From: Macrostomum lignano
Lineage: Eukaryota
NCBI GenBank assembly: GCA_002269645.1
Contig: NIVC01000006.1
Coordinates: 682,001 to 746,000 of the forward strand
Direction: 5' to 3'
Length of the DNA: 64,000 bases
Part shown: piece by piece, positions 1-23,612 of the stretch
Layout of the letters: every line of letters starts with the position of its first letter
Numbering within the stretch: position 1 is the first letter of the stretch
Notes under the pieces: generated by a model
What the model saw: only the letters and a program-made list of their open reading frames with translations
What the model was told of the DNA's origin: nothing
Database searches by the model: none
Position numbers and translations under genes: made by a program

Positions 1-3000
1 GTATTAGGATGGCTCTTCCGCGACGTGCACTTTGCATCGGATAGTACGGAGAAGAATCTGGATCGTCTGGACCACCACCATCATCGCCACCACCGCCACC
101 ACCTCCACCACCACCACCGCCATCATCGCCACCACCACCACCGCCACCATCGCCACCACCACCACCGCCATCTCCGCCGTGGCCGTTGCCTCTGTCGCTT
201 GGCTCCTCCACAGGAGAGTTGGATGGATCGCCGCTCTCTTCAGGTTGGTAGCCGCAGCCAGTTTCGCTATCAATACTTAATCCACTTTCGCTTCCTTCGC
301 TTGTTGGAGCGCGCTGTAATCTAAAATTATAATATTTTTTATTGTCTGTGTTTGAATACTAATCCAAAGTAACTACAAGATCAAGATGCAATAGCAAATA
401 ACTTACATCAAGCGTGAACAGTTGAGGTGACCCGAAAACTTCGCCCATTGATAAGCGTTCATATTCCTCTCTCCGGTCAGGCGCCAATAGTTCGCGTCTT
501 TCATCAACTCTCCGAATATTTCAATGACCTCGATGTGGCCGCAGCGAGCAGCCCAGATCAGAGGTGTGTTGCCGAAGCAATCTTTCAGCCATAAATTTGC
601 TCCGAAGTCACACAACATTTTGAAAGTTCCTGCGTGTCCCTTTTTCGCTGCGTGGACGGCAGCTGAGTATTTAAAAACGTCCTGAAAAACAATTGCATTT
701 TCTTAGGGTTTCATTCATACCAAAAAGGTTTAAATTTTTAACCTCACCTGGCAATCTATATCAGCTTGCATTTTGATGAGCTGCTCCAAAACAGATTTCT
801 GGTCATTTATGGCCGCCAGAATCAGCGGGGTTTGTCGAAGATTATCTTCTCTATTTACTTCTGTCGTCATAGTGCTAGCGTTGTTTGTCAATATTTTCTC
901 AAACGCTATCAGGACTTCTTTGTGGCCTTTGAGGGCGGCCCAGGAAATGGCTGTCCGACCCATTACATCCTGGACACTGACCAGGGATGTGTCAGAATTT
1001 CTATTGAGCAGCGATAGTACCAGGTCATGTTTGCCTCTGGCGGATGCGATTGTTAGCAGAGTCTGATTCAAAGTCCCAAACTTGTGGGCTGTATTCTCCT
1101 GAGATCTGCACAGGGCTGCAAGCTGCGCGTCCGACCACTTATCCGGGGACGCAGAGCTGAATATCCTAATTTGTGATGCGATAGATGGATGTAATGGATG
1201 TGATACGAGTATCTTTCACTTTTGATAGCCCCAGATGTATAGCATTTTATTTGTCTATCTAATAAAATAACAATTAAAACATCAAATGGAATTTTATTAT
1301 CAATGGTTGCTAATAAAGTTTGTACTTAAGAGATTAAAGCAGTGGTATCTGCGGATGTCTAAAACCAAGAAACATGGCTAACAGTGACAATAACTTACTG
1401 CACATCGTCAGATGCAGCGCTATTCAAGAAGAATTTCTTGGTCAGACTGGTGACTGCAGAAGCTTCAGTACCGAATTTTTCGGATCCACCTTTCATCTCG
1501 GGTATGCCCAGCCGCCTGTTCACCTCTGCCACCACGTTCACAATGTGCTCTTTGCTGAATATTTCCTCTTGAACGACGGAGCATAGAACCTCAGCAAGCG
1601 ATCCATTCTCTCCTAGTGAGCCACCGCGGCAGAGAAGAAAGTCTTTCTCAGGAAGTTTAAACGACGTCTCTTCCAGCGGGCAGGCGTTCAGGGTTTCAGG
1701 CTGCTGCTCAGTCTGAACAAAGAAGATCTTCGGTTTGCCCTTTAGAAAGGAGCACTGGTTGACTCGGAACCTGGCCACGATGTCTCTTACTTCGACCTCT
1801 TCACCGTCGCTAGCGAAGAAGCTGGCACCGGTCCCGTGTCCGATGATGAAGCACACGAAGCTGCCCATGTCGGGGAGATCGGACCTGACTATTTTGTTGA
1901 CCGCTGCAAAGATGTCAGCGCTAGTAGGCTTACTTGTGCATTGTTGGATTGTAAAACCAAGGTTTTCGAAGGTGTCGGTAATTATTTTAACTTCCTTCTG
2001 TTGGTTGTGGCTTGAGCTGCGATTGTAGGTCTCGACACTTATTACCAAGCACAGGCCTTTTGCCGTAATGATCTCTGCGTATATGTCGCTTTCCGGCTTG
2101 TTTGAAGTTGAACTGAATGAAAAGGTGCCAAATAGATTTCCATATATTTTCGCCACAATGATTCGAAAGATTCAAATTTTAGCAAAGATTTGTGTGAAGC
2201 TGACTTACGCGACAACTTGCTCTTTGCCAATCCTAACATGCGAATGAGCCCCATCAAACTGTAGCTCATGTTCCTCTTGGCCTTCCGTTTCAAACGCAGG
2301 AACCTTGCACGTCAGTCCTCCTTGTTCTGGTTTAGAAAAAATGTTTAAGTTAGTACTAGATGTACGTCACCTGGTGCCAGTGGCCAAAATATCCGGTCAA
2401 TTCGATATTCAAGCCTAGCCTTGTACGAAAAGCATGCATGTAGTTGCTTTACCTTTATTATAGATGAGAGGGTGCTTCATCAACTCAATAGCCAGCGTCC
2501 GGTCACGAGCTTGTTTTTTAGTGCATTTGTCATAGAAATCTTTCAGATTAGCCGAGCAACTTTCCGGAAGCACTGGAGCCCCCTGCCGTTCCACCCGGCG
2601 AACAATGGCCAGCATGTTCTTGCACTCCCAGTAGGGCCGTTTGGCGATCACCATCTGGTAGATCACGCAGCCGAACGCCCACACATCGGAGGCGCAGCTA
2701 TAGGGAGGGTCCTCGGTCTCAGAAGACAGGAACATCTCAGGCGCCATGAAGTGCGGGTCGCCTCTCTCCCCAGTGGACGGATGCTCCGTTACTGTTTGGA
2801 GAATCTGGATGGCCAGACCGAAATTGACGATCACAATTCGATCGCCCGGACAAACGAGCACCGTCTTGCAGTTGATGTTGCGGTGAATCACCGGATCGTT
2901 GAGACCGTGCAAATATGAAAGGGCGTCGCATATCTGAAATCAGTCGGTGATTCAGGATTTTAATATCGTAGTTTAAATAAGAATGGTGTAAGAAAGCAGC

Positions 3001-3556
3001 CGAACACGTTTTTAAAACCATTGCCAATTTTTACTGTCGTTTAAAAAAGTGGTCATGGACTTCTTAGTAAAGTCGTGTATTTTTTTATTAGCTCATTAGC
3101 TCGTAGAAGTCATTAAGACCCTTCGAGTACCCTTCAAGCCCTGGCTGGGTTCATGGCATAACAAACTTTCGATAATGTACAATTTTACAATTATTTATTA
3201 CGCACCTGTCTTGTAAGATTACAAATGCTCTTCTCAGGCAAGCCTTGTTGGGCGGTGATATGTCGTTCCAGAGTTACCGGTCCCGAAAGCAAGCTCATCT
3301 GTACGGTCACGCACATCTGCTCCTTGTCCACCATGATGCGCTTGAATTTGACCACGTTTTTGTGATCCAATGCGCACAGTTTCTTAGCCTCTTTGTCGCA
3401 AGCCTTAGTCAGAGTTTCTAGCTTATCATGAGCTCCAGCTTCGACAAGATGCCATGGCAAGCGGATTTGTTTTACAGCCTGCAGTTGCTCTGCCTCGCCC
3501 ACCGCTTCGGCGTAAGTTTCGCCTCGATCGCCTCTCGATAGAAGCTCCCGGACCAT
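1..3556 (-). CDS. Multidomain pseudokinase - pseudo-caspase - ankyrin repeats - Gly linker - caspase-like protein (paralog L; 3' end runs off the window)
   Basis: Hand-spliced exons on minus strand: 3556-3206, 2933-2453, 2326-2209, 2112-1399, 1156-748, 681-407, 320-<1. All introns are GT-AG and all junctions are in frame (phases 0,1,2,2,0,2), giving 889 codons in the window. Kinase motifs QAVK, HRNINCKT, NFG, FMAPE, DVWAFG. Caspase motifs KGLCLVI, FVCFIIGHG, LKGKPKIFFVQ. Ankyrin motifs GRTAISWAA, QTPLILAA, GNTPLIWAARCGH. Last exon reads ...GGGGDDGGGPDDPDSSPYYPMQSARRGRAILI, which is the typical caspase p20 N-terminus. Confidence 0.88.
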
Positions 3557-4780
3557 TGCTTGGCTTAGGGGAGAGTTTCAAAACAGTGTTTTACAGCTTC
3601 ATGTGAGCTTCAAATTTACCTGCAATTTTTTGCTAGTGCAGTTAATGTTTAACTGCAGTGTTTCTGCTTAGCCGTAAGAAAGTGGCAAGGCTTTTTAAAA
3701 GCTGTCTAGCTATAGTGTCATTGGTAGCAAGCTTACTCTGCCAAATAGAGGCTTGTTTCTCTTGCCATTATAATACCTTATCTGTCTTTTCTCTTTTCTA
3801 CCCCTATTTTTGTATGAAGAATTAAGTACAGTCTAGACAAGTACTTGCGTTGTAGGGTATAGACTGGGAGAGAAGTAATCTGGGGGAGGGTTAATGTACA
3901 TTAAGTACAGCACATTGCTGTCAGGCAGCATTCTGGAGAGTTTTACACACTGCTTTGCATATCAAATTGAAAAGAAAAGAAAAATAGTACAGCAAGAGTT
4001 GCATTTCATACCCATTTGTGCAGACGTTGTCTCTTGGCTCTCATGCCATTCCATAGCCAGCAATTCTTATCTATAGAACTTGCTCTCGTAGCATGGAGGC
4101 TTAAAACCAACTGGTTTGTAGTTAGAAATTTGGTACCTTATTCTACTGTACAGCGCTTTCCGCCTAGCTAGCTAGTGCAGCCAGTCCCTATCTGTCCTAT
4201 TTTAGAAAGAAACAGTCATTTGGTATATGAATAATAGCTAATTTCTCACTTAGTAGCTATATGTGAATTCGCTATTGGTAATTTCAACTAGCGGCCGTTG
4301 CTCACAGAAGCTTGTTGCAAACTTTTTTTGCCTGTAAAAAACTGTTGAAACATAACAACTAGTGAGAATTAAACAATCGCGAGTGCGACTGTTTGTGGCT
4401 TAAATACAAGGTAAGAAGCTTCACGACAAGTGCTTATTAGCTAATCGTACCAGCTTTTGTAGGTCCAAGCGACATGTAGCCCCTGTCAGTGACTCCGGGA
4501 GGCGTGGCGGGCCACATCATCCACGCCGAGTCACACTGCCCACAGGCGGAGTAGGAGGTGCTGCTGCTAGCGCTGCAAACGGGGAGGACAGACATGGGCT
4601 CGGCGCTTGTTAAACTGCCTTCTGGCTGACGACCGCGCACGCTCAAGCCTTCACACACGCTCTGTGGCGTGACGCTGCATTATACTGTTTTATTATCGTG
4701 TATGCATATAGGCTATCTGGGGTTAAATAATTATCCTATCTGTTGCTTTGTCCGAAGATATTTACGTTGACAAAAGACCG

Positions 4781-6144
4781 CAATGAGGCGGAAGGCCTTT
4801 TATTTTCAATAGATGTGCGGTGCGCACATGTGGCGTGGCGTGATTGGCTACGCCAACCCCCCTGGCTTAGCCAGCCGGCTAGCGCGGTACGCCACCACCC
4901 CACCTCAGCTAGACAGAGGTTGGCGGGGGGGGGGGTTTCCAGTGCGGCTGCACTGGTGCTGCCGGTCGCGTAGTCTGGCCGCCACACAGCTCCCCCCAAC
5001 ACCGAGCTAGGCCCCGAATGTCAGGTGATAGCCGTGCCGAGGAGCGGGCGCCGAAAGCATCGGAGGCAGAGGCGCCGAAGGCTGCGGAGCTGCAGAGGAG
5101 CGGGCGCAGAAATCAGCCGGGCCCCGAAGGCGGCAGGAGTGCGAGATGAGCGCAGAAGGCTGCCAGGGCACGAGGCGGGCGCCGAAGGTGGCAGAGGCGC
5201 GAGGCGGGCGCCGAAGGCGGCAGGGGCGCGAGGCGGGCGCCGAAGGTGGCAGAGGCGCGAGGCGGGCGCCGAAAACGGCAGGGGCGCGAGGCAGGCGCCG
5301 AAGGCGGCAGGGCGCCGAGCGGGCGCCGATGGCAGCAGGGCGCCGAGCGGGCACCAGGCGGGCGCCGAAAGCAGCAGGGGTGCCAGGCGGGCGCCGATGG
5401 CAGCAGGGGTGCCAGGCGGGCGCCGATGGCAGCAGGGGCGTCAGGCGGACGCCGATGGCAGCAGGGGCGTCGGCGGGCGCCGAAGTCGGCAGCGCGCCAG
5501 GAGGGCGCCAAAGGCAGCAGCAGGGGCGCGCGGCCGGACCAGACCAGAGGCAATCGACAGTCAGTTGCCGCCGTGAGCCGGGTCGATGCTCCTGCACAGA
5601 GGCTGGGGACGTTAGGCTAGCAGCAGCGGTGCTAACCTAGAGTTTGCTGCAGCGTGTGGCGCTGGTTGGTCCAACGCGGGGGCCGAAAAGCGAGACCCCA
5701 GGAGCTACCGGGGGGCGGGCTGACTGGGCCGATTCGTGCGGGGTACTGCTGTGGCTGCGGGGCTGCTGTGCTGCCGTTGCAGTCGGCCAAGGCAGTTGGC
5801 TGCCAGGACCGCACAGGGCCGACCAGGTAGGCCCAGCGTTCCGCGCTGGGAGTCGGGCTCACCAATGAGGCGGAAGGCCTTTTATTTTCAATAGATGTTG
5901 TGGCAGCGAAGATTGTGCACTGCGTTGCGCGTATATATTTATATGATTGAAAACAGCGCGAGATTATTGAGGGGCCTAGGGAGGTGCGCACATGTGGCGT
6001 GGCGTGATTGGCTACGCCAACCCCCCCCCCCCTGGCTTAGCCAGCCGGCTAGCGCGGTGCGCCACCACCCCACCTCAGCTAGACAGAGGTTGGCGGGGGG
6101 GGTTTCCAGTGCGGCTGCACTGGTGCTGCCGGTCGCGTAGTCTG
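4781..6144 (+). mobile_element. Element bounded by ~197-bp direct repeats (4781-4977 and 5863-6144, the second with an ~85-bp insertion) around a GC-rich core; type unresolved
   Basis: CAATGAGGCGGAAGGCCTTTTATTTTCAATAGATGT...GGTCGCGTAGTCTG occurs twice almost identically. No clear TG..CA ends, TSD or coding capacity seen. Confidence 0.5.
5040..5525. repeat. GC-rich ~29-bp minisatellite (GAGGCGGGCGCCGAAGGCGGCAGGGGCGC-like)
   Basis: Repeated AGGCGGGCGCCGA core visible; explains the low-complexity ORFs in several frames on both strands. Confidence 0.85.
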
Positions 6145-6178
6145 CCCCCCACAGCAACCTATTTTCCTTCACTTCAGC

Positions 6179-9100
6179 ATGGTCAAAAACTACTCAATCG
6201 GGGAACAGATCGGTCGAGGCGAGTATGCTAGTGTCCATGCCGTCACCATCAAGGACCGGAGCCCAACAGCCACTTGTGTAAAGCTGATCAAACTGCCAAC
6301 GAACTCTGAGCAAGTCTTAGACAAAAAAGAGCTCACTGAATTGGTAGAAAAACACAAGCCACTCAGAGAACTGAAACACCGGAACTTGATTCAAATTGAA
6401 GACCTTCATGTCATTCAACAAGACTACTCTATCGCAGTGTTCATGGAGCGGTTTCAAGGAAAAACATTGGAATATTTACTGAAAACAAAGGGTGCCATCA
6501 CCCAAGAAGATAAGATTCGGCACTACTCCAAGCAGGTGAGCACTGCATGGATTTCTATGACGTGTTAATTCACAAGCCCCATAACCAAACAGTCTCTGAC
6601 TTATTTCTAATTAATTAGTTGGTTTTTTATTTAATTAAGCACAATTCTCAACTTCTCTGCAGATCTGTGAAGCTTTGAAGTATCTTCACCACGACTTAAA
6701 GGACCCCGTCATTCACAGAAACATCTGCAGTAAAACAGTTATGATAGACGACAACGATTTAGTTAAGTTAATTGACTTTGGCATCTCCATTCAGCTGATT
6801 GATGCGGTGAGCCATCAGGTGACGCAGTGTCCGAGAGGCCATCCGAACTACATGGCTCCAGAGTTGTTCTTGGAGGAATCCCGCTCTGAAGTCCAGAGCC
6901 TCTACAGTCGGGGCTCAGACATCTGGGCTTTCGGTTGCGTTGTGTACGAGATGACCACTGGTGCGAAGCCGCTTGGAGATTGCAGAAACATGCTGGCCAT
7001 AGTTAACAAAATCAAATATCACGGAGCTCCAAACCTACCGGAGGCGAGCTCTGAGCAGCTGAGAGACTTCTATAAAGGCTGCATGAGAATGAATAGGAAA
7101 GAGAGAATGTCGGCAGCAGATCTGCTACGACACGAGTTTCTCAGTCCTGGTATGCAATTTTATGGTTTTTTGAGCTACATGTATATTTTTCACTGTTATT
7201 TTGGCTAGTTGTTAACTGATATAAGCTCTCTTTTAGTATATGACAAACACTGGGACAATGTCCGTCTGCTGAGCAGAGGAGGCTTCGCAGAAATTCACGA
7301 GGCTCTCACGGACAAGGGTATCCGTTGCGCCGTAAAAACTCTGAAGCTGCCCCTTCAACTCGGTGATCAACGGGACAAAGTGCAGAGAGAAACCGATCGA
7401 GCTATTGAAAGCGAGATGAACCTGTGCAGATTACGGCATGACAACATCGTAAAGATCTTTGACATTTTGCAGCCAGAAATTGCCACGGTTGTTGTGTTCA
7501 TGGAGCTGCTGGATGGCAAAACTTTGGAATTGGTGATAGATGGAAAACCACTGGATGAGGGAATGATTCGTCTTTTCGCTTCACAAGTAAGCATGAATAC
7601 TGAGTTGAATTATCAGGTTTGCTCATTATCCTGATCGCATTACTTTCGTTTACTCATATTTCAGATCTGCAGCGCACTTAGCTACATGCACAATCAGCCA
7701 GAAAAATCAGCCGTGATTCACAGAGACCTCAACTGCTCAAATATCGTGATTCTAGATGATAACAAGGTCAAGTTGATTGATTTTGGCTTATCGCACAGGC
7801 TAGGAACGTCGATTAGTCACAGCACCGCCTCGTCAGTGAAGGGCACGCTGAACTTCATGGCGCCGGAGCTACTGGGTGACGACGAAAAAATTGTGTACAG
7901 CACAGCATCAGATGTCTGGGCATTCGGTTGCGCCGTCTACCAGATGGCCACTGGAGAGCGGCCGTTCGAGAAAATTAAAAACCTAAATCGTCTTATTCAC
8001 ACTCTGAAAGAGCAAGGCGCCCAATTATTGCCAGATTCTTGTTCGAGTCTGCTGAAAGATTTCTATGCCAGTTGCGTTATGCGCCAGCGCTTGGAGAGGG
8101 CGTCCGCTATAACGTTGATGAAGCACGAGTTTCTGACTTTCAAGTAAGTCTGCTTGCATTTTGTCTATTAAAGTTCATATTTTTGTATCAACGATGGCTC
8201 TGTATTTTTGTACTTTTAGTCGAGCATATTGTTTCTTTTAATTCCTTTAATTAGAGCCTCGGAGTACGAGGATGAAGACCGATACGAATCCAGTGCTAGC
8301 CAGAAAGGAATGTGCGCAATCATTGACATGCTCCCATCTGGCTCGGACTCAAAACTCTCTGCTAAAATCAGCAAAAGTTTTGAAAAGTTCGATTTCATCG
8401 TCAAGTCGCTACCAGACGCAACCTGTCAAACCGCTTGGAGCTTCATCGGGGACATCGCAAACAGTCAAGAGCTTGCAGACTCGAAATGCTTTGTTTGTTT
8501 TGTTATAGCTTCCGGTTCGAACGGACATCTGTACTCAGCTGACAATGATGAGAGCATTGAAATCAGAGATCTGCTTGCCAGGTTTCGCTCTAGCCAGTGT
8601 CCCAGCCTGAAGGACAAGCCGAAGCTTTTCTTCATTCAGGCCGCGCAACCGGCCAGTGCAGCCGCCGGCTTGGACGAATCCACGACGCGAATTCGAGACG
8701 ATGACTTTCTGGTTTGCATCAACGATGCCGACCTGGATTCATCGTTTGTCGGGACATTGTGCACCGTTTTAGAAGAGGACAAATTTAGCGACTTAGACAT
8801 TGAAGGAGTTGTGGATGAGGTGAACAATCGCCTAAAACTGGAACCGTTGGTTAAAGCGAAAAACCGGGCTCTTAAATCCATGTCGGAAGCAGTTTCCACT
8901 TTGACGAAGAAATTTTACCTGAAGCCGGAACCGGTGAAACCGGATCCCAGGTGAGCTTTTTCGTTGTTTTAGAGGCTTATTGAGAAGAATGCACAAAAAT
9001 TAGCTAAATCAGCAACACTAATTGCTGGTATTCGAGGAGCACTTCATCCTGCAGACAAACAAGTTTCCAGTACCACCACCGAACTAACCTACTTATTAAC

Positions 9101-12100
9101 CTACTATTATTAACCTATTCGTCCTACTTTAACCTAATAAAGTAGGTTAGGTTAAGTTAAAGTAGGTTAGGTTAAAGTAGGTTAAAGTAGATTAGGTTAA
9201 AGTAGGTTAAAGTAGGTTAGGTTAAAGTAGGTTTATATTTTAAATATCATATTTAAAATGATCATATTTTAAATTATATATTAAACGATCATATTTTAAA
9301 TGATCGATACTCAATGAAACGATTGGGCCCGATGATGCCATCTTTGATCACTTCCACCACAAGAGCTTTATTTAAAACAGTTGTTTAGTGAATAGGAGGG
9401 ATTTCTTATTCTTCCCATTGATTCATACTGTTTAGCATAGAAAGATAACGAATATTTCAGAGCGGAGTCGCCAGAAAAGTGGGACGATGAACAATTGAAG
9501 AGGCTAATAGAGGAGGAGGCAAGTCAATGCGCGAACCCGGACTTCACCAGCCAAAAGTACGGCCCGTTAGGACAGACGCTGCTGTCGATCGCAGCAGACA
9601 AGGATAGCAGCGAGTTAGTCAAGCTTGCGCTCCAGACGGCGGCCACTTTTCCATCCATTCACTCAGATCTCGACGTGATGGGCAGGACGGCCCTTTCCTG
9701 CGCCGCAGCCAAAGGATCAGACGCGGTTCTGGCCGCTTTCGAGCAGGCATTCATCGATGCGGCCGATGTTCAGAAATCAGTGGTCAACGAAGCCAACTAT
9801 ATGCGCCAGACTCCTATCATTGTGGCAGCCAAGCAAAACAGGACGAATGTTCTCGAGAAGTTGGTCCGGATGGGAGCAGATATCAATCAGAAGGTGAGGC
9901 TGTGTTGATACTCACTAGTTTTACTCAACTATCAATCACAAAAATGTCCTATCAACTCTGAATCACAAAAACAGACAGAGACAGAAAGAAACAATCATGA
10001 TAGAAACCAAAGGCTGATTCAGTTCAAGAAGCAACTTTATCGCCTTTATCAAAGAGCTCAGGAACTTATACAGCGCAGACACATCCGCCCGGCCTCTGCA
10101 CGACCAAGCATGATGTTCTCTTTTACTGCCTCGATGACGGCCTTCTTAAAGCCATTGAAATGAAACAAATATGTTTGCGTTTTGCGATTGCCTACCTGCT
10201 TTCACGTTGGGTTTTTAGGAATTTTGAGACGCTTTAGTCCCGGTTCCGTCAGCAAGCTCTACTGCAGCATGGCCGGTTCCAAGGACCAGGCTGCCAAAAT
10301 TTAATTTTCAAAACAGTCGATTCTCTTTCGAAGTGTAGAACCCTTTTGCACTTTTTTCCGTATTTCAAGCACCTGGCAGGCAATTCGAATTCTTCCGATC
10401 AACTTGCTGGCTTCATGCTGCTCACATAATCCTTATCCAGATGCATCTTGCGGCAAAACGTTTGAAGGGTTTTAACTCTGGGTCTATAGTCGTCTGATCT
10501 GTATGACCTTTAGCATTTGTAAACATTCGATATTTGGCTACAAGTGGCCACTGGCCAGTTAGTGTTTATGACGTATGGCGTCTCTACGCTCGTACATTTC
10601 ATTATATTTGATTTCGTAAAAATTCTGCACATGCAGCTTATATATATGAATTTGCATTTCAGGATATTGTAGAAGCCACCGCATTAATCTACGCGGCTAA
10701 ATTCGGATTTGTTGACGCGGTGCGCAAGCTGCTGGAACTCGGCGCCGATGCAGCTCTCGCAGACCGTTCGGATCAAACACCGCTAATTTGGGCAGCTCGC
10801 TGTGGCCACACCGATGTTATCAACGCTCTATCTGAAAAGTTCAATAGTCTGGAGCCCTGGAACCACCGGAGCACGCGGTTGCGCAACTTAACCGCGCTTG
10901 AATGGGCTAAGCTCTGCGGCCATGATGCCACTGCGGACAGGATTCAGCAGCTGTAAGTAATTGGCGACGTAATTTTTGTTCCAATGGCTGAATGCTCTGT
11001 AGAAATCTGCACCTCCTGCTTTAATGGGCGTAGGAAATCGGCCGTCACGAGGGTCCTCCGTTTCCACCAGACCATTTAAAATTTTTCCGTGAATATCCTC
11101 TAAGCTACTTTAAACTTTTTCCTGTCTTGAACCCTCACAATGACACCCAGGAGCCATCCATGATCCTGTTAAGCCATTAAGAAGTTTTTAATTATTTAAA
11201 TATTTTAAATGATCGATGCAAACTATTTCAGAATTCAACAGATAACCGGAGCGACACAGGAGGCGGACGCCACTACCGACCCACAATCAAGGGGTGGCGG
11301 TGGCGGTGATGACGGTGCCAGTAGTGAAGCGACAGGAACTTCCGCCGGAAGTAGCCACGGAAGCGGAGGAAGCGGCGGCGGAGCCGTTGGTGGAGGAGGT
11401 GGTGCTGATGAAGTTGGTGGAAGGGGTGCCGGTGGCGGAGGTGCCGGTGGCGGAGGTGGTGGTGGCGGAGGTGGTGGTGGCGGAGGTGGCGGTGGCGGAG
11501 GTGGTGGTGGCTGGCCTATTTACCATATGAACAACCCAGTCAGAGGCCTAGCAATAGTTATCAGTCGGAACACGATTCCACCAAATGCAGGTTTTCAGAA
11601 CATACATTGGATGCCGGATCAGCAGACTCAATCTTTTGTCGGTTGTTTAAGCGACCTACGCTTCGATTTCTTAGTGCTACCAAATATTCCGAGAAACCTT
11701 TATTATAATCTCCGAACCACGGTACTCAATTGGCCGACGTATGCCACCTCTGATTCTCTTCTCCTCTGCCTGATGTCTTATGGCGAACACGGCCGAGTGT
11801 ATGACTGCAATGGAGAGCGTGTTGAGCTGGAAACAATGTTTCGACAGTTCAGAGAGTGTCCACTGCTCTCTGGTAAGCCGAAAATATTCATGGTCGATGC
11901 TGGTCGTGACATTCCTCATGAGAGACTGGTGTTGGAGCAGGCAATTCAGGAGAACGCGGGCCAGCACCAGGACTGTAATTACATTTACAGTGTTGTAAAA
12001 GGAAACGCCTGCTACCAAGAGGTAGAGAACGGCTTTTGCTTCATGCAGTCCATGGTGAATTTACTGCGCTGGCCAAGTTTCGATTCAGCCACGGAAGATT

Positions 12101-12210
12101 TTGCGTCCTTTCTGACGAAAGTCGTCAGCGACGTGTCGAACAAGTGCACAGCAAAGCAGATTGTCTGCCACACGAGCACCTTGCAGCGCCATATCATTTT
12201 AGGAAATTAA
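6179..12210 (+). CDS. 1356-aa tandem kinase (pseudokinase + kinase) - pseudo-caspase - ankyrin repeats - poly-Gly - pseudo-caspase protein (paralog R)
   Basis: Exons 6179-6535, 6663-7149, 7237-7586, 7665-8143, 8255-8950, 9461-9893, 10663-10952, 11232-12210 total 4071 nt (1357 codons). Every GT-AG junction keeps frame. Kinase 1: GRGEYA, CVK, HRNICSKT, DFG, YMAPE. Kinase 2: CAVK, HRDLNCSN, DFG, GTLNFMAPE. Caspase A: FVCFVIASG, LKDKPKLFFIQAAQ. Ankyrins: GRTALSCAA, QTPIIVAA, QTPLIWAARCGH. Caspase B: YHMNNPVRGLAIVI, LMSYG, LSGKPKIFMVDAGRD. Confidence 0.9.
9065..9310. repeat. Degenerate AGGTT(AAAGT) simple repeat with an upstream inverted copy, followed by AT-rich ATATTTTAAATGATC repeats (intron 5 of paralog R)
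   Basis: AACCTAC/CCTACTTTAACCTAA units precede AGTAGGTTAGGTTAAAGTAGGTT units. Confidence 0.65.
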
Positions 12211-13372
12211 CCCGAGAACTCGTAATTTTTATGACGCTGATCCTGTAAGGTAAAATGCATAAAGTATATTTACTTTTATAATTTCATCTGGTGACAGTGT
12301 CTCGTTATTTTCATCCAGTTGCTTTTCCTCCAACTATCTAAAAATTGTTTTAATGTGGGGATCCAATATAAACCCAGATGATACTACTTCAAACTAATCA
12401 AACAGACCCGTGTGGCAGTGAGAAAACAAATTTAAGTTAAGCCTAAATCCTAACCGACGACTGATATTATAATTTTCGTATACTGCGCACTTCGATTGCT
12501 TGTTGGGTTTTAACATTAACATTTATTGTTGTTATCTTTTGTTTTTTCGATGCTTTTATGATGACGTCAATGTATACATTTGATTCACCTACATATCCTA
12601 CTTTGTATACTGAATGATTTTTTTGTATGTTTTAAAAAAATTGTTATAGACAAAGCAGTTTAACATAATTAAATCTTTATTAGGAATAATGTATTGAACT
12701 CAAAAAGTTGTGTATTAGATTGCATCTACAAACTACATGTAATTGGAACTTGCAATGCCCCTGAATATACAGCCGCTGGTTTTGTTTGCTAATGAGGGAC
12801 AGAGGCTCCCTCCATCGTGTGAATTTCCCGCCGAAACTATACGGAAAATGTTACAATTTTATACCGCACCCAATTTGTTTGAATGCGCCGCACCCCCACC
12901 CCCTTTTACTAAAAATACAAGAACGTTTTTTCACCCGTGAATTCTAACTTGGCCCTTGCTGGCAGCGCTCATTTTTTTCTCTAATAATACCTAAGTAACT
13001 GACGGATCTTTCCAATATAGTTTTTCGTATTAGCTAGAATCGGAAAAGCAAGTGCAAATTGGCTGGGTGGGAAAACCAAGTCGTGCAGTAGTTTTGCTTC
13101 AGGGCGCCAAATGAGTGCCTGCGGCGCCAATATGAGTGCCTGCGGCGCTAAAATGCTAAATTGAGTGCGGCGCCAAAATGAGGCTAGTGCTAACAGCACC
13201 GCTTTTCAAAATAATGTAGGAATTTAGCCATGTAGACTTCTTGGCTTTGTCCCCCACTATAAAATCCATGGTGACGCCCCTGGCTGTAATTATCTTAAAA
13301 AGTGCTAATTAAAAATCAATCTTATAATATCTTAAAAATCTGGGGACCCCACATACAGGTGGTGAGACATGT

Positions 13373-14025
13373 CAGTGGCGTATACTCGAGAATTTTATTT
13401 GCAGGATTTGCAACATTACAGAGACCAGTATTTGGTCTCTAGGTTAATACCTCGATCGCTTGTTGGGCGCCCCTGTCTCTTGGTGGGTGCCCCTGTCTCT
13501 TGGTGGGCGCCCCTGTCTCTTGGTGGGCGCCCCTGTCTCTTGGTGGGCGCCCCTGTCTCTTGGTGGGCGCCCATATCTCTTGGTGGGCGCCCCTGTCTCT
13601 TGGTGGGCGCCCCTGTCTCTTGGTGGGCGCCCATATCTCTTGGTGGGCGCCCCTGTCTCTTGGTGGGCGCCCCTGTCTCTTGGTGGGCGCCCCTGTCTCT
13701 TGGTGGGCGCCCCTATCTCTTGGTGGGCGCCCCTGTCTCTTGGTGGGCGCCCATATCTCTTGGTGGGTGCCCCTGTCTCTTGGTGGGCGCCCCTGTCTCT
13801 TGGTGGGCGCCCCTGTCTCTTGGTGGGCGCCCCTGTCTCTTGTTGGGCGCCCATATCTCTTGGTGGGCGCCCCTGATCTCTTCTAACAAGAGAAGGTAAT
13901 TAAACACGAGCCCCTCTGTCATTCGTCAAGCTCGCGGTTACCTCTTATTTAGTTTCTTGGGGATTACAATTATTATAAAGGGGCCATTGGGGGGGGCACC
14001 TCCACCCTAGCTGCGTACGCCACTG
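13373..14025. mobile_element. hAT-like MITE (653 bp) with an internal 20-bp minisatellite
   Basis: 10-bp TIR CAGTGGCGTA...TACGCCACTG; perfect 8-bp TSD AGACATGT at 13365-13372 and 14026-14033. Confidence 0.85.
13445..13875. repeat. 20-bp minisatellite TTGGTGGGCGCCCCTGTCTC, about 21 copies
   Basis: Directly visible tandem units inside the MITE. Confidence 0.95.
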
Positions 14026-14396
14026 AGACATGTACAGCAGTAAGTTTTATTCTGCTGTACTTGTAAATATACCGGCATAATGTACTGCACATGTACACTG
14101 CAGTCTTTCACAAGCACTTGGACGATCGATTTAGTCTCATCTGTATTGTGGTCCAAAAGTGCAATGTACCTATACGAACATGTACTCTCAAGGACATCAA
14201 AAGTTTTTGGATTCTAAATTTAAATGTACTAGCTCTTTAATTAGGCTACTAGGGGGCAGAGCAGCCTATAGGCTCTCGCTCCATGACCTCTGGTTTATTG
14301 ATTCCCTGCGCAACCGCATTTGGGGTTGTGAAACGAAAAATTGGCCATGTGTGTTTTGTCGCCATGAGGGCCAACCCCCAATAAAGCACAGGGAGT

Positions 14397-14552
14397 GTAC
14401 ATGCCTGATGATTAGAAAGACAGTCAGGGCCGCTGTACACCTTGTGTGAGCTTTGTGTTAGACGTGACTGTGTACGCTCGTATAATATTAGCTTGCTTGT
14501 ATGTGCATCAGGAGAGTCAGTGGAATGGGAGGAACTGCCTCAGCGCTGGTTG
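14397..14552 (+). repeat. Dispersed repeat family copy 1 (related copies at 34948-35089 + and 44660-44771 -)
   Basis: Shared motifs GTACATGCCTGA..., GTCAGGGCCG.TGTACACC and GAGTCAGTGGAATGGG..GAA.TG.CTCAGCGCTGGTTG. Confidence 0.65.
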
Positions 14553-15757
14553 TGGGGCGATATCGCAAAAGAATTTTCGCCAGATTTTTGCGAGTATTAT
14601 TACATTTTTGTTACATTTTTGTACAAATATTATTGCATCTGAATATTATCGTATTATTTATATTTTAGCGAACGCTGAGCTTTTTGGTTGGACCGTGGAC
14701 CGATTTGCTCAGCTGCCATCGGTTGGGATTTTTTTCCAATTTTAATACGAATGTACATGCAGAGTTTATGCAACACCGCCAGATCCCCAGTGAAAACTCT
14801 GCAGCTTCTGACGAAAACTTAGACGAAAACCCCAGTTTTTGTGTCCTTTTTGTATTACTCTTCTTTAATCCTTCACATTTCGGGACTTGAGTGGATATAG
14901 AATTTCTTCGTTAATTTTCTAACTTTTACTCGCCATAACTCCTCAAACTCCCATCGATGACGGTCTACATATCTTCTCAACGCAACTTGAAATTAACACA
15001 TGAGATATGACAGTTGCTACGTGTAGATGTAAACCCAAATTTCTTACCACATATCTAGTATCGCACCCAGTGGTACTATTAATTTGCTATTAAAAATTCG
15101 AAACACTGCACGTACATACGCAAATAAGCCGCGAATTTTCCCTCCCTCATTTATAAACAGCAACGCTAAAAGTAGCGCCTTTAATTACAAGCCTTTGAGG
15201 GCCAAATTTGTCTTCCGAAACTCACTAGATACTTATAAGCAGAGATTTTAGATTTTTCTTAGCTCTGAGTAACCTACCATACCATCAGAAATATATCTTG
15301 CTAAAACTAAAACGCTACTATTAGTAGTAAGTAGTATAACAATAACATTGGTTGGTGCCCGTGAGTCGTGGGTGGGACATCGGTTAAAAATTACAAGTTA
15401 AACGGTAATTTGAATTTAATGTTGGCAAGCCTGCAGAAAATCTTAAAGCAAATCATAAAAGCAGTAGCATCTGAAATCAGTTATTTACTCCCACGACTAT
15501 CTGTTTTTAAAGTTTGAATACCTCAGCAGTCCGAGATTCTTTATATGCATAGCAAATTTGTTTTAACCGTAAAACAATTTTAAATGCAGTTAATTTTTGA
15601 AGAAAAATATGTACAAATCATCATCATGATTTTTGCAGCAGGTGCACCATTCACGTTAGCATTAAATTGTTGTGTTTATTATTAGAACCAAAAATTGAAA
15701 GCTCAACATAAACATTTTTTAGTTTAAAAAAAAAACAAATCGAAATATTTAAAGGTC

Positions 15758-18700: not shown

Positions 18701-21700
18701 GCATTTTTGTTAAAACTAAGTCGCACAGCCAACAAAATTTTGGAGGTTGCGCATGTATGAGCAAGACACTTAACTCTGCATTGCTTTAGTTCACCCAGCT
18801 ATAAAATGGGTGCTAGTATTAGCTGGGATAATTGAGGGTGTATGTGGCAACCCCCTAGTCCTTGGACTGAACAGCTATATATGGCCTTCAGATGTGCCAT
18901 GCAATAGCTATGGCTGAGCTGTTGGTTGCACATCTGCTTATTATGGCAGATATAATCAATTATTATTATAATAATTATTATTATTAATTATATTATTGTT
19001 AATATTGCAATATAGAACTTATAAAGGTTGAATTTAGCCAAAATAGTAATTAAAAAATATAGTATCAAAGTAACAATCTTTAAATTTTTCTAAGATTTGT
19101 TAGTTGAATATTCCTAACTACATATTGTGTAATACTAGTGCCAATGTGAAAGGAAAATAAAATTATTTTAAAAAAATTTCTTTCCTCACAAAACTTTTAG
19201 CCTGCTTACTTTGGACCAGTGTGCCAATAATACTTTTGAAAACATTGGTCAGCAAGTGCAGAAGTATTTTACTAAACAAGATGGATTCAAGGTTGGCACT
19301 GCTTTGGTAAGTAGAAGAATGCTTCATATGCCATTTTTAATACTTTAATGGTAGAATTTGTGTTCAATTGTTAAAGGCAGGTGGGTGAAAGGTTGTGAAG
19401 GGAGGTCAGTGAAGGGAGGTGGGTAAAGGGAGGTGGATGAAGGGAGATGGAATGATGGATGAAAGGAGGTGGGTGAAGGGAGGTGGGTGAAGGGAGGTGG
19501 TGGAGGGAGGTAGGTAAGGGAGGTGGTGAAGGGAGGTGGGTGAATGGAGGTGGTGAAGGGAGGTGGGTGAATGGAGGTGGTGAAGGGAGGTGGGGGAAGG
19601 GAGGTGGGTGAACGGAAGTGAGGTTAAAAATGAACACCGACAGTTTTTGCATTCTCATCTCGCATTCTCTTCGCCAGGTGTTGCTCCTGCAGAACCCCGA
19701 TCTGCTGCCTAATCGGATGCAACAGCTGGTGGCTCTCTACCTGCTCTTGGAGTTGACCCGAGTTGACCCGCCCAATGTGAACCCATTTCAACCCGCGTTT
19801 GTTTACGCCATGCGATCGGACGAGAACGATACGAGGCATTTTCGCGTTCCCTGCCTGCCGCTGCAGGAGCGCGTGTTCTTGTACAGCCTGCTGCAGAGCA
19901 CCCACGCCAGCGGCCAGCCTTCTAGGGAACTCTTGAAGAAAACCCCTCAGCAGGTTTGTAAAACTGTTGGTGTCTGTCATCTTGAAATGCATGAGTCAGT
20001 GTTTCATTAATCATTTCGAGGCCATAAATCATATATCTGCAACCAAAAATCATCATTCAGAAACTAAAAATCATCATTCAGAAACCGAAATCATCATTCA
20101 GAAACTAAAAATCATCATTCAGAAGCCATAAATCATCATTCAGAAGCCATAAATCATCATTCAGAAGCCATAAATCATCATTCAGAAGCCATAAATCATC
20201 ATTCAGAAGCCATAAATCATCATTCAGAAACTATAAATCATCATCAAAATCCAAGAATCATCATTCAGAAACCATAAATCATCATTCAGAAACCATAAAT
20301 CATCATTCAGAAACCATAAATCATCATTCAGAAACCATAAATCATCATTCAGAAGCCATAAATCATCATTCAGAAGCCATAAATCATCATTCAGAAGCCA
20401 TAAATCATCATTCAGAAGCCATAAATCATTACTCAGAAACCATAAATCATCATTCAGAAACAAAAAATCATCATTCAGAAACCATAAATCATCATTCAGA
20501 AACCATAAATCATCATTCAGAAACCATAAATCATCATTCAGAAACCATAAATCATCATTCAGAAGCCATAAATCATCATTCAGAAGCCATAAATCATCAT
20601 TCAGAAGCCATAAATCATCATTCAGAAACTATAAATCATCATCAAAATCCAAGAATCATCATTCAGAAACCATAAATCATCATTCAGAAACCATAAATCA
20701 TCATTCAGAAACCATAAATCATCATTCAGAAACCATAAATCATCATTCAGAAACAAAAAATCATCATTCAGAAACCATAAATCATCATTCAGAAACTATA
20801 AATCATCATCAAAATCCAAGAATCATCATTCAGAAACCATAAATCATCATTCAGAAACCATAAATCATCATTCAGAAACCATAAATCATCATTCAGAAAC
20901 AAAAAATCATCATTCAGAAACCATAAATCATTACTCAGAAACCATAAATCATCATTCAAAAACCATAAATCATCATTCAGAAACCATAAATCATCATTCA
21001 GAAACCATAAATCATTACTCAGAAACCATAAATCATCATTCAAAAACCATAAATCATCATTCAGAAACCATAAATCATTACTCAGAAACCATAAACCATC
21101 ATTCAAAAACCATAAATCATCATTCAGAAACCATAAATCATAATTCAGAAACCATAAATCATCATTCAGAAACCATAAATCATTACTCAGAAACCATAAA
21201 TCATCATTCAGAAACCATAAATCATCATTCAGAAACCATAAATCATCATTCAGAAACAAAAAATCATCATTCAGAAACCATAAATCATTACTCAGAAACC
21301 ATAAATCATCATTCAAAAACCATAAATCATCATTCAGAAACCATAAATCATCATTCAGAAACCATAAATCATTACTCAGAAACCATAAATCATCATTCAA
21401 AAACCATAAATCATCATTCAGAAACCATAAATCATTACTCAGAAACCATAAACCATCATTCAAAAACCATAAATCATCATTCAGAAACCATAAATCATTA
21501 CTCAGAAACCATAAATCATCATTCAGAAACCATAAATCATTACTCAGAAACCATAAATCATCATTCAGAAACCATAAATCATCATTCAGAAACCATAAAT
21601 CATCATTCAGAAACCATAAATCATCATTCAGAAACCATAAATCATCATTCAGAAACAAAAAATCATCATTCAGAAACCATAAATCATTACTCAGAAACCA

Positions 21701-23612
21701 TAAATCATCATTCAAAAACCATAAATCATCATTCAGAAACCATAAATCATCATTCAGAAACCATAAATCATCATTCAGAAACAAAAAATCATCATTCAGA
21801 AACCATAAATCATCATTCAGAAACCATAAATCATCATTCAGAAACCATAAATCATCATTCAGAAACAAAAAATCATCATTCAGAAACCATAAATCATTAC
21901 TCAGAAACCATAAATCATCATTCAAAAACCATAAATCATCATTCAGAAACCATAAATCATTACTCAGAAACCATAAATCATCATTCAAAAACCATAAATC
22001 ATCATTCAGAAACCATAAATCATCATTCAGAAACCATAAATCATCATTCAGAAACCATAAATCATCATTCAGAAACCATAAATCATCATTCAGAAACCAT
22101 AAATCATCATTCAGAAACAAAAAATCATCATTCAGAAACCATAAATCATTACTCAGAAACCATAAATCATCATTCAAAAACCATAAATCATCATTCAGAA
22201 ACCATAAATCATAATTCAGAAACCATAAATCATTACTCAGAAACCATAAATCATCATTCAAAAACCATAAATCATCATTCAGAAACCATAAATCATCATT
22301 CAGACGCCATAAATTATCCCCAAATCACCGCAGATAGCCAACAGTGTATTCCCGCCCAACGTGATTCCCAGCGAGCTGGACCTGAGTTTCCTAGAAAGCC
22401 CATACGCGGAGCGGGCCAAGGAGATGCCGGTGGTGAGTCGGGTTGCTATGCCGTGCGTCCTGTCCGATCCCGAGCGCCGTCTGGCCTCGATGGAATCTTA
22501 CAGCGGCTCGGGCAGCTCTGCGGAGGCCCAGCGCCAGGTGCTGGACTCGCTGCTCACTGGTGACCAGGCAGCTGTCCGATCTCACCTGCGGCCGGAGTTT
22601 CTCCTGCTGGCGCCGCCGCTGCACAGCGTCGGGATCGAGGACGAACTCGTGTGGATGTCGCCGACTGGCCTTGAGCACACCGCTCAGTGGGACGCCTCTA
22701 TGTGCCAGAGCGGCTCTTCCGGGGGTGAGTGACATTTGAAGGTCAAACTAGTTATTTTCTAAGCTGCTAAAATGCTACAGGTGTCGAATCTCACCCAACA
22801 TCACCTGAGAATCTCACCCAACCCCACCTGAGAATCTCACCCAACCCCATCTGAGAATCTCACCCAACCCCATCTGAGAATCTCACCCAACCTCGTCTAA
22901 TCTCACCCAACCCCACCTGTGAATCTCACCCAACCTCACCTGAGAATCTCACCCAACCCCTATCCTCCCAGCCGAGACCCGGAAGCTGATGGTGCGGGCC
23001 TTCAAGCAGACTCTGCAACAGTCGCAGATTCGCCAGCTAAACGAGGCCATCTCCCAGGATCCCAAGCTGATCAGCCTAAGCGGCATGTCTCCATCCCGGC
23101 TGCCCGAACTGGTTGAGCACAATCCCCTGGTTGCTATCGAGGTGCTGCTCACCCTGATGAAGGCCAGCTCGCCCCAAGTCACGGACTATTTCTCTGTCCT
23201 AGTGAACATGGAGATGTCCCTGCACAGCATGGAGGTTGTCAACCGCCTGACAACCAGTGTTGAACTGCCTGCGGAGTTCATCCACCTGTACATCAGCAAC
23301 TGCATATCGTCGTGCGAGTCAACCAAGGACAAGTACATGCAGAACAGGCTGGTCAGGCTGGTGTGCGTGTTCCTGCAGTCGCTGATCCGCAATAAGATTA
23401 TTGACGTCAAGAATATCTACATCGAGGTGCAGGCTTTCTGCATCGAGTTCAACCGCATCCGGGAGGCTGCTGGCCTGTTCCGGCTGCTAAAATCCTTGGA
23501 GTCCAGCGATGGCAGCGTCGACTCCGCCGCCGCTTCTGCCGCTCTGGCTGCTGGCGGCGGCGGCCCGGGTTCGAATCCGCCTAGCGCCGCCACCACGCCT
23601 TCGAAGCCGTAG
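15758..23612 (+). CDS. CNOT11: CCR4-NOT complex subunit 11 (C2orf29 / DUF2363), 483 aa
   Basis: Exons 15758-15795, 19201-19306, 19678-19953, 22334-22724, 22972-23612 total 1452 nt, all in frame. N-terminus [12 protein letters not shown]...TFE...[23 protein letters not shown] and C-terminus [16 protein letters not shown]...[59 protein letters not shown] match the recognisable CNOT11 sequence. Confidence 0.95.
16940..17592. mobile_element. MITE (653 bp) with 8-bp TSD (hAT-like), CNOT11 intron 1
   Basis: 16-bp TIR CCATAGTGCGGAAGGA...TCCTTCCGCACTATGG; TSD CCTAGGCC at 16932-16939 and 17593-17600; subterminal GTA(C/T)GACA motifs. Confidence 0.8.
18124..18420. mobile_element. hAT-like MITE family A, copy 1 (297 bp)
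   Basis: TIR CATACATGCGCAAC / GTTGCGCATGTGTG; 8-bp TSD TGTAGCCT at 18116-18123 and 18421-18428. Confidence 0.85.
18514..18759. mobile_element. hAT-like MITE family A, copy 2 (246 bp, opposite orientation)
   Basis: Perfect 14-bp TIR CATACATGCGCAAC...GTTGCGCATGTATG; TSD AGCAAGAC at 18506-18513 and 18760-18767; internal sequence is the reverse complement of copy 1. Confidence 0.88.
19375..19622. repeat. Purine/G-rich simple repeat (GAAGGGAGGTGGGT-like), CNOT11 intron 2
   Basis: Directly visible tandem units. Confidence 0.85.
20030..22312. repeat. 21-bp minisatellite AAATCATCATTCAGAAACCAT, about 108 copies, filling CNOT11 intron 3
   Basis: Directly visible; produces the spurious (NDDLWFL)n ORFs. 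Confidence 0.97.
22790..22960. repeat. ~20-bp repeat TGAGAATCTCACCCAACCCC, CNOT11 intron 4
   Basis: About 8 units visible. Confidence 0.85.

What the first reader, a model, noticed from the sequence alone, without database searches (positions are those of the whole stretch)
1..12210. Head-to-head paralog pair with the same architecture and conserved intron positions
Seen: the minus-strand gene has the same domain order and matching intron positions/phases (phase 0 at Q|IC in the kinase, phase 2 after caspase A, phase 0 inside the ANK region, phase 2 before the Gly exon). The proteins are strongly diverged, so the inverted duplication is old and both copies stayed open. Inference: divergent pairs are typical of co-regulated sensor/helper pairs (plant paired NLRs are the known analogy). 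Paralog L lacks an active kinase and might act as decoy or regulator of paralog R.
Basis: partly seen in the sequence, partly recalled or inferred. Interest (0 to 1): 0.72.

Follow-up and report, generated by a model that had tools for sequence, protein, structure and literature searches.

The report
Divergent flatworm kinase–caspase gene pair
Two neighbouring, oppositely oriented genes of the flatworm Macrostomum lignano encode old, intact, transcribed copies of a flatworm-only protein that joins kinase, caspase-like and ankyrin modules; almost all their catalytic sites are mutated, so they probably act as scaffolds or regulators, not as cell-death proteases.

Summary
Window 1-12210 is Macrostomum lignano scaffold NIVC01000006.1 and carries two head-to-head paralogues, with start codons 2,622 bp apart.

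- **Gene R (+, 6179-12210):** 8 exons, 1356 aa.
- **Gene L (-, 3556 to 619 nt beyond the window edge):** 7 exons, 1095 aa. I fetched the flank, and L is open to its stop codon.
- **Similarity:** the proteins are 36% identical (E 2e-133).
- **Expression:** GenBank's purely RNA-seq-derived gene models match both genes, so both are transcribed.

- R has two kinase domains. Its second kinase sits where L has a 118-nt mini-exon.
- L's kinase is indeed dead (HRN, NFG), but so is R's first kinase.
- All four caspase-like domains of the pair lack the catalytic cysteine. Only R's second kinase is canonical.

A second head-to-head pair of the same family on another scaffold keeps catalytic C-terminal caspases.

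The family is the "kinase pro-domain caspase" of M. lignano, noted once in the literature as sister to flatworm ankyrin-caspases. Functional coupling of the pair (L regulating or partnering R) is plausible but untested. The analogy to plant paired immune receptors rests on orientation alone.

The parts
1..320 (-). Gene L, last exon (window part). Holds the Gly/Asp-rich linker and the first residues of the C-terminal caspase-like domain (CaspB). The exon continues 619 nt beyond window position 1 to a TAG stop.
   Evidence: Pfam Peptidase_C14, E 2.5e-17, for the full exon read from L003. CaspB keeps SHG, but QACRG is QANRG and the S1-Arg loop is deleted.
407..681 (-). Gene L exon 6: second part of the ankyrin region. 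Entered in phase 0 and left in phase 2.
748..1156 (-). Gene L exon 5: first part of the ankyrin region. The GenBank and UniRef models use an alternative in-frame acceptor 9 nt upstream, at 1165.
1399..2112 (-). Gene L exon 4: caspase-like domain A. It is a pseudo-caspase: GHG is kept, but the catalytic Cys is replaced (VQTEQ).
   Evidence: (PF00656, E 9e-21).
2209..2326 (-). Gene L exon 3: 118-nt linker mini-exon (phase 1 to phase 2). It occupies the slot that holds kinase 2 in gene R.
   Evidence: It is present independently in UniRef model P0121 and GenBank PAA94593.1.
2453..2933 (-). Gene L exon 2: kinase C-lobe, with HRN instead of HRD and NFG instead of DFG.
3206..3556 (-). Gene L exon 1: start codon at 3556 and the kinase N-lobe. 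It ends at the phase-0 Q|IC intron.
3557..6178 (.). Shared 2,622-bp region between the two start codons. It contains a 29-bp GC-rich minisatellite (5047-5534), two ~93% identical direct repeats (about 4781-4990 and 5863-6155), and a probable 5'UTR exon of R (about 5653-5835).
   Evidence: It shows no similarity to the intergenic region of the second pair.
6179..7149 (+). Gene R exons 1-2 (6179-6535, 6663-7149): kinase 1, a pseudokinase. It has HRN and Thr in place of the catalytic-loop Asn, while DFG is kept. It has the Q|IC phase-0 intron and ends in phase 1, as L's kinase does.
7237..8143 (+). Gene R exons 3-4 (7237-7586, 7665-8143): kinase 2, the only domain of the pair with canonical catalytic motifs (Lys, Glu, HRDLNCSN, DFG, APE). 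It is closest to the kinases of paralogues P0004 and P0007 (52-56% identity).
8255..8950 (+). Gene R exon 5: caspase-like domain A, a pseudo-caspase (the His position is Ser, and Cys is replaced by Ala in IQAAQ).
   Evidence: (PF00656, E 1.2e-19).
9461..10952 (+). Gene R exons 6-7 (9461-9893, 10663-10952): ankyrin repeats, split by a phase-0 intron at the same position as in L.
11232..12210 (+). Gene R exon 8: poly-Gly linker plus C-terminal caspase-like domain B. CaspB is catalytically dead (SHG to SYG, QACRG to DAGRD, S1 Arg lost). The stop codon is at 12208-12210.
   Evidence: (PF00656, E 2e-16). The GenBank model has the same span and length.

Best explanation
**What it is (shown)**
- L and R are an ancient inverted duplicate pair.
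- They belong to a Macrostomum-specific family with the architecture atypical or pseudo-kinase, pseudo-caspase, about five ankyrin repeats, low-complexity linker, caspase.
- This is an extended form of the flatworm ankyrin-caspases.
- Both genes are intact and transcribed.

**Catalytic state (shown)**
- L has lost the key residues of its kinase and of both caspase-like domains.
- R has lost them in kinase 1 and in both caspase-like domains.
- R carries an extra, canonical kinase (K2), inserted where the other family members have a short linker exon.

**How it probably works (inferred, not shown)**
- The pair no longer acts as proteases. It acts as a kinase-plus-scaffold module.
- R supplies phosphotransfer from a pseudokinase-kinase tandem, as in JAKs.
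- L is a catalytically inert partner or regulator. It would bind through its caspase-fold and ankyrin surfaces, as cFLIP binds caspase-8.
- L's target would be R or the still-catalytic paralogues at the second locus.
- The shared 2.6-kb upstream region would give coordinated expression.
For: **Gene models and identity**
- Gene models.
- The window is 100% identical to NIVC01000006.1.
- GenBank models derived only from RNA-seq (PMC5730564) match L exactly over 846 aa (PAA94593.1). They match R in start, stop and length, 1356 aa.

**Domains and catalytic residues**
- Pfam domains.
- Catalytic-residue survey.
- CaspA and CaspB are true caspase folds, nearest to caspase-3 and -7.

**Evidence that K2 is a later insertion**
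- L, R-K1, P0005 and P0124 all share Thr at the catalytic-loop Asn position.
- A phase-1 intron follows R-K1, as it follows L's and P0124's kinase.
- K2 is 52-56% identical to the P0004 and P0007 kinases, against 39-44% to the others.

**Evidence of constraint**
- The reading frames of 1095 and 1356 codons are open, and every intron has GT-AG ends.
- dN/dS is about 0.14-0.31 in the kinase C-lobe, CaspA and ankyrin region between L and its nearest paralogue. This is a rough figure because dS is saturated.

**Evidence bearing on coupling**
- The only other locus with this architecture is also a head-to-head pair.
- The CaspB catalytic state is concordant within pairs.
- CaspB sequences group by locus partner in 97% of quartet bootstraps.

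**Literature**
- An M. lignano caspase with a kinase pro-domain is reported as sister to the ankyrin-caspases (PMC11463336).
Against: - There are no expression-correlation, interaction or activity data.
- Head-to-head adjacency of inverted duplicates can persist without selection.
- Concordance of the caspase state in two pairs has about a 1 in 3 chance expectation.
- The CaspB grouping of L with R may be long-branch attraction between two fast-evolving dead domains. CaspA gives the conflicting topology (L,P0005)|(R,P0124) at 89%.
- The two pairs' intergenic regions share no detectable sequence.
- R-K2 has a degenerate Gly-loop (SRGGFA), so its activity is not assured.
- My exact R protein was not found in the protein collection, although its span and length agree with GenBank.
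Confidence: 0.55

Rival explanations
1. L and R are merely neighbours. An inverted tandem duplication made them, a later segmental duplication copied the pair, and the genes now function independently. The head-to-head layout would be historical inertia with no regulatory or physical coupling.
For: - Two events explain both pairs.
- Breaking a 2-3 kb intergenic region is rare, so adjacency needs no selection.
- The intergenic regions of the two pairs are not conserved.
- Related genes with other architectures (P0007, P0250) are unpaired.
- The domain trees conflict.
Against: - All four genes with this architecture sit in pairs.
- The partners share the CaspB catalytic state and group together in CaspB.
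- L and R share a poly-Gly linker that the other pair lacks.
Confidence: 0.3
2. Sensor/helper pair in the sense of plant paired NLRs. L would be a decoy-bearing sensor whose dead kinase baits a pathogen or stress factor, and R would be the executing helper.
For: - Head-to-head layout.
- L is a complete pseudoenzyme.
- In M. lignano the ankyrin-caspase module is fused to varied N-terminal domains, including Mab-21-like ones. This is a pattern typical of innate-immunity gene families.
Against: - R has no working caspase to execute anything.
- No NB-ARC, LRR, death-fold or TIR domains were found.
- No immune-induction data exist.
- The other pair has the dead-HRD kinase in a different member (P0124, HRQ), which the CaspA tree places on R's side of the quartet rather than L's.
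Confidence: 0.1
3. L (and perhaps the caspase parts of R) is a transcribed gene in decay, released from constraint after losing its catalytic sites and not yet hit by stops.
For: - All catalytic residues of L are lost.
- L's kinase N-lobe and CaspB are only 29-31% identical to its nearest paralogue, against 55-58% for the kinase C-lobe and CaspA.
- One UniRef model of R uses an acceptor that frameshifts before CaspB.
Against: - L is 1095 codons long with no stop, and all six of its introns have GT-AG ends.
- dN/dS is well below 1 in three of its regions.
- The dead CaspB still matches the full caspase profile at E 2.5e-17.
- A 98% identical second copy, P0121, is also open.
Confidence: 0.05

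Closest known systems
[quoted passage not shown]
   Same: Ankyrin repeats lie directly N-terminal to a caspase domain, and the group is flatworm-restricted. The paper places an M. lignano kinase-bearing caspase as sister to the ankyrin-caspases. L and R have that ankyrin-caspase core plus kinase.
   Different: - The text I could read mentions only a kinase pro-domain.
- Here there is also an internal pseudo-caspase domain, and one or two kinases.
- The genes lie in head-to-head pairs.
- In L and R the catalytic Cys of the terminal caspase is lost.
- The paper calls ankyrin-caspases specific to parasitic flatworms. M. lignano is free-living.
cFLIP (CFLAR) and other pseudo-caspases
   Same: A caspase fold that lacks the catalytic cysteine. 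cFLIP is encoded next to its active paralogues and acts by heterodimerising with caspase-8 (established knowledge). CaspA in every family member, and CaspB in L and R, are such pseudo-caspases.
   Different: There are no DED domains. The pseudo-caspase is fused in one chain with a kinase, ankyrin repeats and a second caspase domain. Heterodimerisation has not been shown here.
JAK-type tandem pseudokinase-kinase (JH2-JH1)
   Same: R has a catalytically impaired kinase immediately N-terminal to a canonical one. JAK2 proteins appear among distant hits that span both domains.
   Different: There is no FERM or SH2 region. The kinases are not tyrosine-kinase-like in particular: the nearest solved structures are a mixture of EGFR, PLK, MAP3K, PAK, MST and BRAF.
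RIPK4/ANKK1 (kinase plus ankyrin repeats) and RIPK1-caspase-8 signalling
   Same: A Ser/Thr-type kinase is combined with ankyrin repeats, and kinase and caspase modules are linked in one pathway (established knowledge).
   Different: No specific similarity to RIP kinases was found. Here the modules are covalently fused, and there is no death domain or RHIM.
Plant head-to-head paired NLRs (e.g. RGA4/RGA5, RRS1/RPS4)
   Same: Divergent orientation with a short shared upstream region, and one partner carrying non-catalytic "bait-like" domains.
   Different: The protein family is unrelated. The partners here are paralogues of the same architecture. There is no evidence of immune function, co-regulation or interaction.

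Membership tests
Caspase family (peptidase C14A) | Caspase fold, shown by a profile match over the p20 and p10 regions | tested here: met
   PF00656 scores: L CaspA E 9e-21, R CaspA E 1.2e-19, R CaspB E 2e-16; L CaspB E 2.5e-17 over profile positions 1-231 of 233. The nearest solved structures are caspase-3 and -7.
Caspase family (peptidase C14A) | Catalytic His-Cys dyad (SHG ... QACxG) | tested here: not met
   L CaspA has GHG/VQTEQ. R CaspA has SGS/IQAAQ. L CaspB has SHG/QANRG. R CaspB has SYG/DAGRD. Paralogues P0005 (QSCRD) and P0124 (QACRG) keep the dyad in CaspB.
Eukaryotic protein kinase | Kinase fold (Pkinase profile) | tested here: met
   All three kinase domains match PF00069 and PF07714.
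Eukaryotic protein kinase | Catalytic residues: HRD Asp, catalytic-loop Asn, DFG Asp | tested here: inconclusive
   Met in R kinase 2 (HRDLNCSN, DFG). Not met in L (HRN, Thr, NFG) or in R kinase 1 (HRN, Thr). Enzymatic activity was not assayed.
Flatworm ankyrin-caspases | Ankyrin repeats as the pro-domain directly upstream of the caspase domain | tested here: met
   The order ankyrin exons, linker, CaspB holds in L, R, P0005 and P0124.
Flatworm ankyrin-caspases | Phylogenetic grouping with the ankyrin-caspases of parasitic flatworms | not tested
   This rests on the literature only (PMC11463336). No Schistosoma sequences were fetched.
Paired sensor/helper immune receptors (plant NLR pairs) | Head-to-head genes with a short shared upstream region | tested here: met
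   The start codons are 2,622 bp apart (3556 and 6179). The second pair on NIVC01000166.1 has the same layout.
Paired sensor/helper immune receptors (plant NLR pairs) | NB-ARC/LRR receptor architecture | tested here: not met
   Only kinase, caspase and ankyrin profiles were found.
Paired sensor/helper immune receptors (plant NLR pairs) | Co-regulation and physical or genetic interdependence of the partners | not testable with these tools
   Only the existence of transcripts for both genes could be shown.
JAK-type pseudokinase-kinase tandem | FERM-SH2 receptor-binding region upstream of JH2-JH1 | tested here: not met
   R starts directly with kinase 1, and no FERM or SH2 profile was found.

The most novel reading that the evidence does not exclude
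L and R form an obligate heteromeric pseudoenzyme complex: a cFLIP-like inert partner plus a JAK-like pseudokinase-kinase partner. The complex would be encoded as a bidirectional gene pair and would gate the still-catalytic ankyrin-caspases of the sister pair (P0005/P0124). This would be a flatworm-specific, kinase-controlled cell-death or immune switch, organised like paired receptors in plants.
Probability: 0.12. Interest if true: 0.75.

Novelty: new variant of a known kind. Interest (0 to 1): 0.45.

Why it matters
- **Gap in flatworm cell-death biology.** Flatworms lack FADD and, in parasitic lineages, DED caspases. How their lineage-specific ankyrin-caspases are controlled is unknown.
- **What this locus adds.** In a free-living, transgenesis- and RNAi-amenable flatworm, the ankyrin-caspase core is fused to kinases and to an internal pseudo-caspase.
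- **A natural comparison.** The genes come in divergent pairs. One pair has kept its caspase catalytic residues and the other has lost them. That contrast allows a direct test of what the protease, kinase and scaffold parts each contribute.
- **If the genes are independent.** The locus would still be a clean example of pseudoenzyme evolution, and of a domain inserted into a phase-compatible exon slot.

Tried and rejected
- **Fetching L's flank.** The flank was reached only after the representative search returned P0350, which is L's last exon.
- **Third homologue search.** A CaspB alignment returned only generic caspases and not the family itself.
- **Shared promoter elements.** Comparing the intergenic regions of the two pairs found no similarity.
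- **Recent gene conversion.** At the DNA level L and R match only in GGN runs and short motifs.
- **dN/dS.** L against the P0005-like gene has saturated dS, so the ratios are rough. R against P0124 was not attempted for the same reason.
- **A single family tree.** The domains disagree: CaspA and CaspB give opposite quartets, and kinase and ankyrin are unresolved. I therefore do not claim that the pair was copied as a unit.
- **RIP-kinase identity.** This was considered and dropped because the nearest solved kinases are a generic mixture.
- **Pairing at related loci.** P0007 and P0250 have no partner within 10 kb.
- **Literature search by locus tag.** Mlig003293 returned nothing.
- **Structure prediction.** Not run, because the tool reports no inter-domain geometry and so could not test the dimer idea.
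Full report
**Origin of the window**

The best protein hits are all from Macrostomum lignano. Window 1-10112 is 100% identical to the reverse strand of GenBank scaffold NIVC01000006.1 of assembly GCA_002269645.1. The sequence is therefore flatworm nuclear DNA with spliceosomal introns.

**Gene models**

From stop-to-stop frames and splice sites I built both genes. Every intron in both has GT-AG ends.

| Gene | Strand | Exons (window coordinates) | Intron phases | Protein |
|---|---|---|---|---|
| R | + | 6179-6535, 6663-7149, 7237-7586, 7665-8143, 8255-8950, 9461-9893, 10663-10952, 11232-12210 | 0,1,0,2,2,0,2 | 1356 aa |
| L | - | 3556-3206, 2933-2453, 2326-2209, 2112-1399, 1156-748, 681-407, 320-1 and onward | 0,1,2,2,0,2 | 1095 aa |

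- Joining L's kinase exon (phase 1) directly to its caspase exon (phase 2) would shift the frame. A 118-nt exon at 2326-2209, with a TACTAAC branch site upstream, resolves this.
- That exon is present independently in UniRef model P0121 and in GenBank PAA94593.1.

**Finishing gene L**

A search of protein representatives returned P0350, whose start matches L's last 37 window-encoded residues.
- Its contig gave 10.6 kb of flank.
- L's last exon runs 619 nt past window position 1 to a TAG stop. L is 1095 aa, or 1098 aa with an in-frame acceptor 9 nt upstream in exon 5.
- No further family member lies in the next 10 kb.

**Expression**

- The GenBank annotation of this assembly was built only from genome-guided RNA-seq transcripts (StringTie/TACO/TBONE plus TransDecoder) (PMC5730564).
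- **L:** it appears as BOX15_Mlig003293g4 (846 aa, partial), identical to my model. A 243-aa partial model follows in the same frame, 27 nt further on inside the poly-Gly run.
- **R:** it appears as a 1356-aa product with exactly my start and stop. My exact R sequence was not found in the protein collection.

**The observation**

- L and R align at 35.6% identity over 790 positions, E 2.4e-133.
- On a three-way alignment with paralogue P0124, four introns fall in the same column and phase: Q|IC in the kinase (phase 0), after caspase A (2), inside the ankyrin region (0), and before the linker exon (2).
- The architecture differs in one respect. R has two kinases, each with the Q|IC intron.
- L, P0005 and P0124 instead have a short linker exon. 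It is 118 nt in L and 58 nt in P0124, entered in phase 1 and left in phase 2.
- R's kinase 2 (829 nt, also phase 1 to 2) sits in that same slot.

**Domains and catalytic residues**

Pfam finds kinase, caspase (PF00656) and ankyrin profiles only. Both caspase-like domains are true caspase folds, nearest to caspase-3 and -7.

| Domain | L | R | P0005 | P0124 |
|---|---|---|---|---|
| Kinase | HRN, Thr for catalytic-loop Asn, NFG | K1: HRN, Thr, DFG. K2: HRDLNCSN, DFG, Lys, Glu, APE (canonical) | HRD, DFG, but Thr | HRQ, Thr |
| CaspA | VQTEQ, no Cys | IQAAQ, no Cys | no Cys | no Cys |
| CaspB | SHG, QANRG, 6-residue deletion removing the S1 Arg loop | SYG, DAGRD | SHG, QSCRD (intact) | SHG, QACRG (intact) |

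- L is therefore a threefold pseudoenzyme.
- R keeps one canonical domain, kinase 2.

**Origin of R's second kinase (inference)**

Three points suggest that K1 is the ancestral domain and K2 a later exon-pair insertion:
- L, R-K1, P0005 and P0124 share the Asn-to-Thr change.
- R-K1 ends in a phase-1 intron, as L's and P0124's kinases do.
- K2 is 52-56% identical to the canonical kinases of paralogues P0004 and P0007, against 39-44% to the rest.

**A second pair**

- P0124 lies on NIVC01000166.1, head-to-head with a P0005-type gene about 2 kb away.
- Searches with R and with L found this architecture only in four groups: R, L, P0005 and P0123/P0124. So every known member sits in a divergent pair.
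- Relatives with other architectures are unpaired. These are P0007 (ankyrin, kinase, CaspA) and P0250 (Mab-21-like, ankyrin, caspase).

**History**

- Synonymous sites between L and its nearest paralogue are saturated (pS about 0.7).
- dN/dS is roughly 0.14-0.31 in the kinase C-lobe, CaspA and ankyrin exons.
- L and R share no DNA-level similarity beyond GGN runs, so there has been no recent gene conversion.
- Quartet bootstraps disagree by domain:
  - CaspA gives (L,P0005)|(R,P0124) at 89%.
  - CaspB gives (L,R)|(P0005,P0124) at 97%.
  - Kinase and ankyrin are unresolved.
- Either the pair was copied as a unit and partners later co-evolved or exchanged their last exons, or the CaspB result is long-branch attraction between two dead domains. 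I leave this open.

**Mechanism (inferred, none of it tested)**

- Caspases work as dimers, and pseudo-caspases such as cFLIP act by pairing with active ones (established knowledge).
- A chain with a dead and a live caspase domain could form such a pair internally.
- In L and R, where both domains are dead, what remains is a scaffold of ankyrin and caspase folds. R adds a pseudokinase-kinase tandem.
- The most likely role is non-proteolytic signalling or regulation. L would be an inert partner of R or of the catalytic sister pair, co-expressed from the shared 2.6-kb region.

**Comparison with the literature**

- One paper reports an M. lignano caspase with a kinase pro-domain as sister to the ankyrin-caspases of parasitic flatworms (PMC11463336).
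- In the text I could read, it does not mention the internal pseudo-caspase, the pairing or the dead sites.
- I rate the locus a new variant of a known kind, of moderate interest.

Noticed in passing
window 4781-6155: The region between the two genes holds a GC-rich 29-bp minisatellite (5047-5534). Two ~93% identical direct repeats flank it (about 4781-4990 and 5863-6155). The N-terminal extension of UniRef model P0001 maps to 5653-5835, which suggests a 5'UTR exon of R between them.
   Followed up: partly
window 11232-11264: UniRef model P0001 joins R's exon 7 to an acceptor 32 nt downstream of the one used here and in GenBank. This shifts the frame and removes CaspB. It may be an alternative isoform or a model error.
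   Followed up: partly
L001 (NIVC01000166.1:124892-150261), genes at about 3437-7997 (-) and 10001-15367 (+): A second head-to-head pair of the same family (P0005-type and P0124). Both members keep the catalytic dyad in the C-terminal caspase. GenBank annotates the left gene only as a 559-aa kinase plus caspase fragment.
   Followed up: yes
L004 (NIVC01002235.1) and proteins P0250, P0392, P0281: M. lignano also has ankyrin-caspases whose N-terminal part gives a weak Mab-21 (cGAS-like family) C-terminal-domain match, at 22-25 bits against a cut-off of 24.1. The ankyrin-caspase module is thus combined with different N-terminal domains.
   Followed up: partly
proteins P0003 and P0004 (BOX15_Mlig034440g1): Related M. 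lignano proteins carry two or three nearly identical tandem kinase domains (79% identity between repeats). The inter-kinase junction (…EFFIVSPVF…) resembles R's K1-K2 junction (…EFLSPVY…).
   Followed up: no
window 19618-23612 (+): A CNOT11 gene (PF10155, E 4e-52 for 22989-23612). A 2.3-kb array of about 110 copies of a 21-bp unit (20022-22318) lies between apparent exons.
   Followed up: partly
window 13459-13882, 45200-47350, 43700-44300, 48900-49700, 58300-59500: The rest of the window is rich in satellites. There is a 20-bp array, a ~2-kb array of 27-bp units, and several tetranucleotide-type runs that read as (DRQT)n or (LSVC)n in translation.
   Followed up: no
window 60139-62321 (-): Exons of a gene with a DUF676 putative serine-esterase match (E 8e-6 for 60139-60576).
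   Followed up: no
window 14361-14566 and L001 8401-8586: A ~200-bp stretch at 69% identity is shared between the flank of R and the intergenic region of the second pair. It is probably a dispersed repeat.
   Followed up: no
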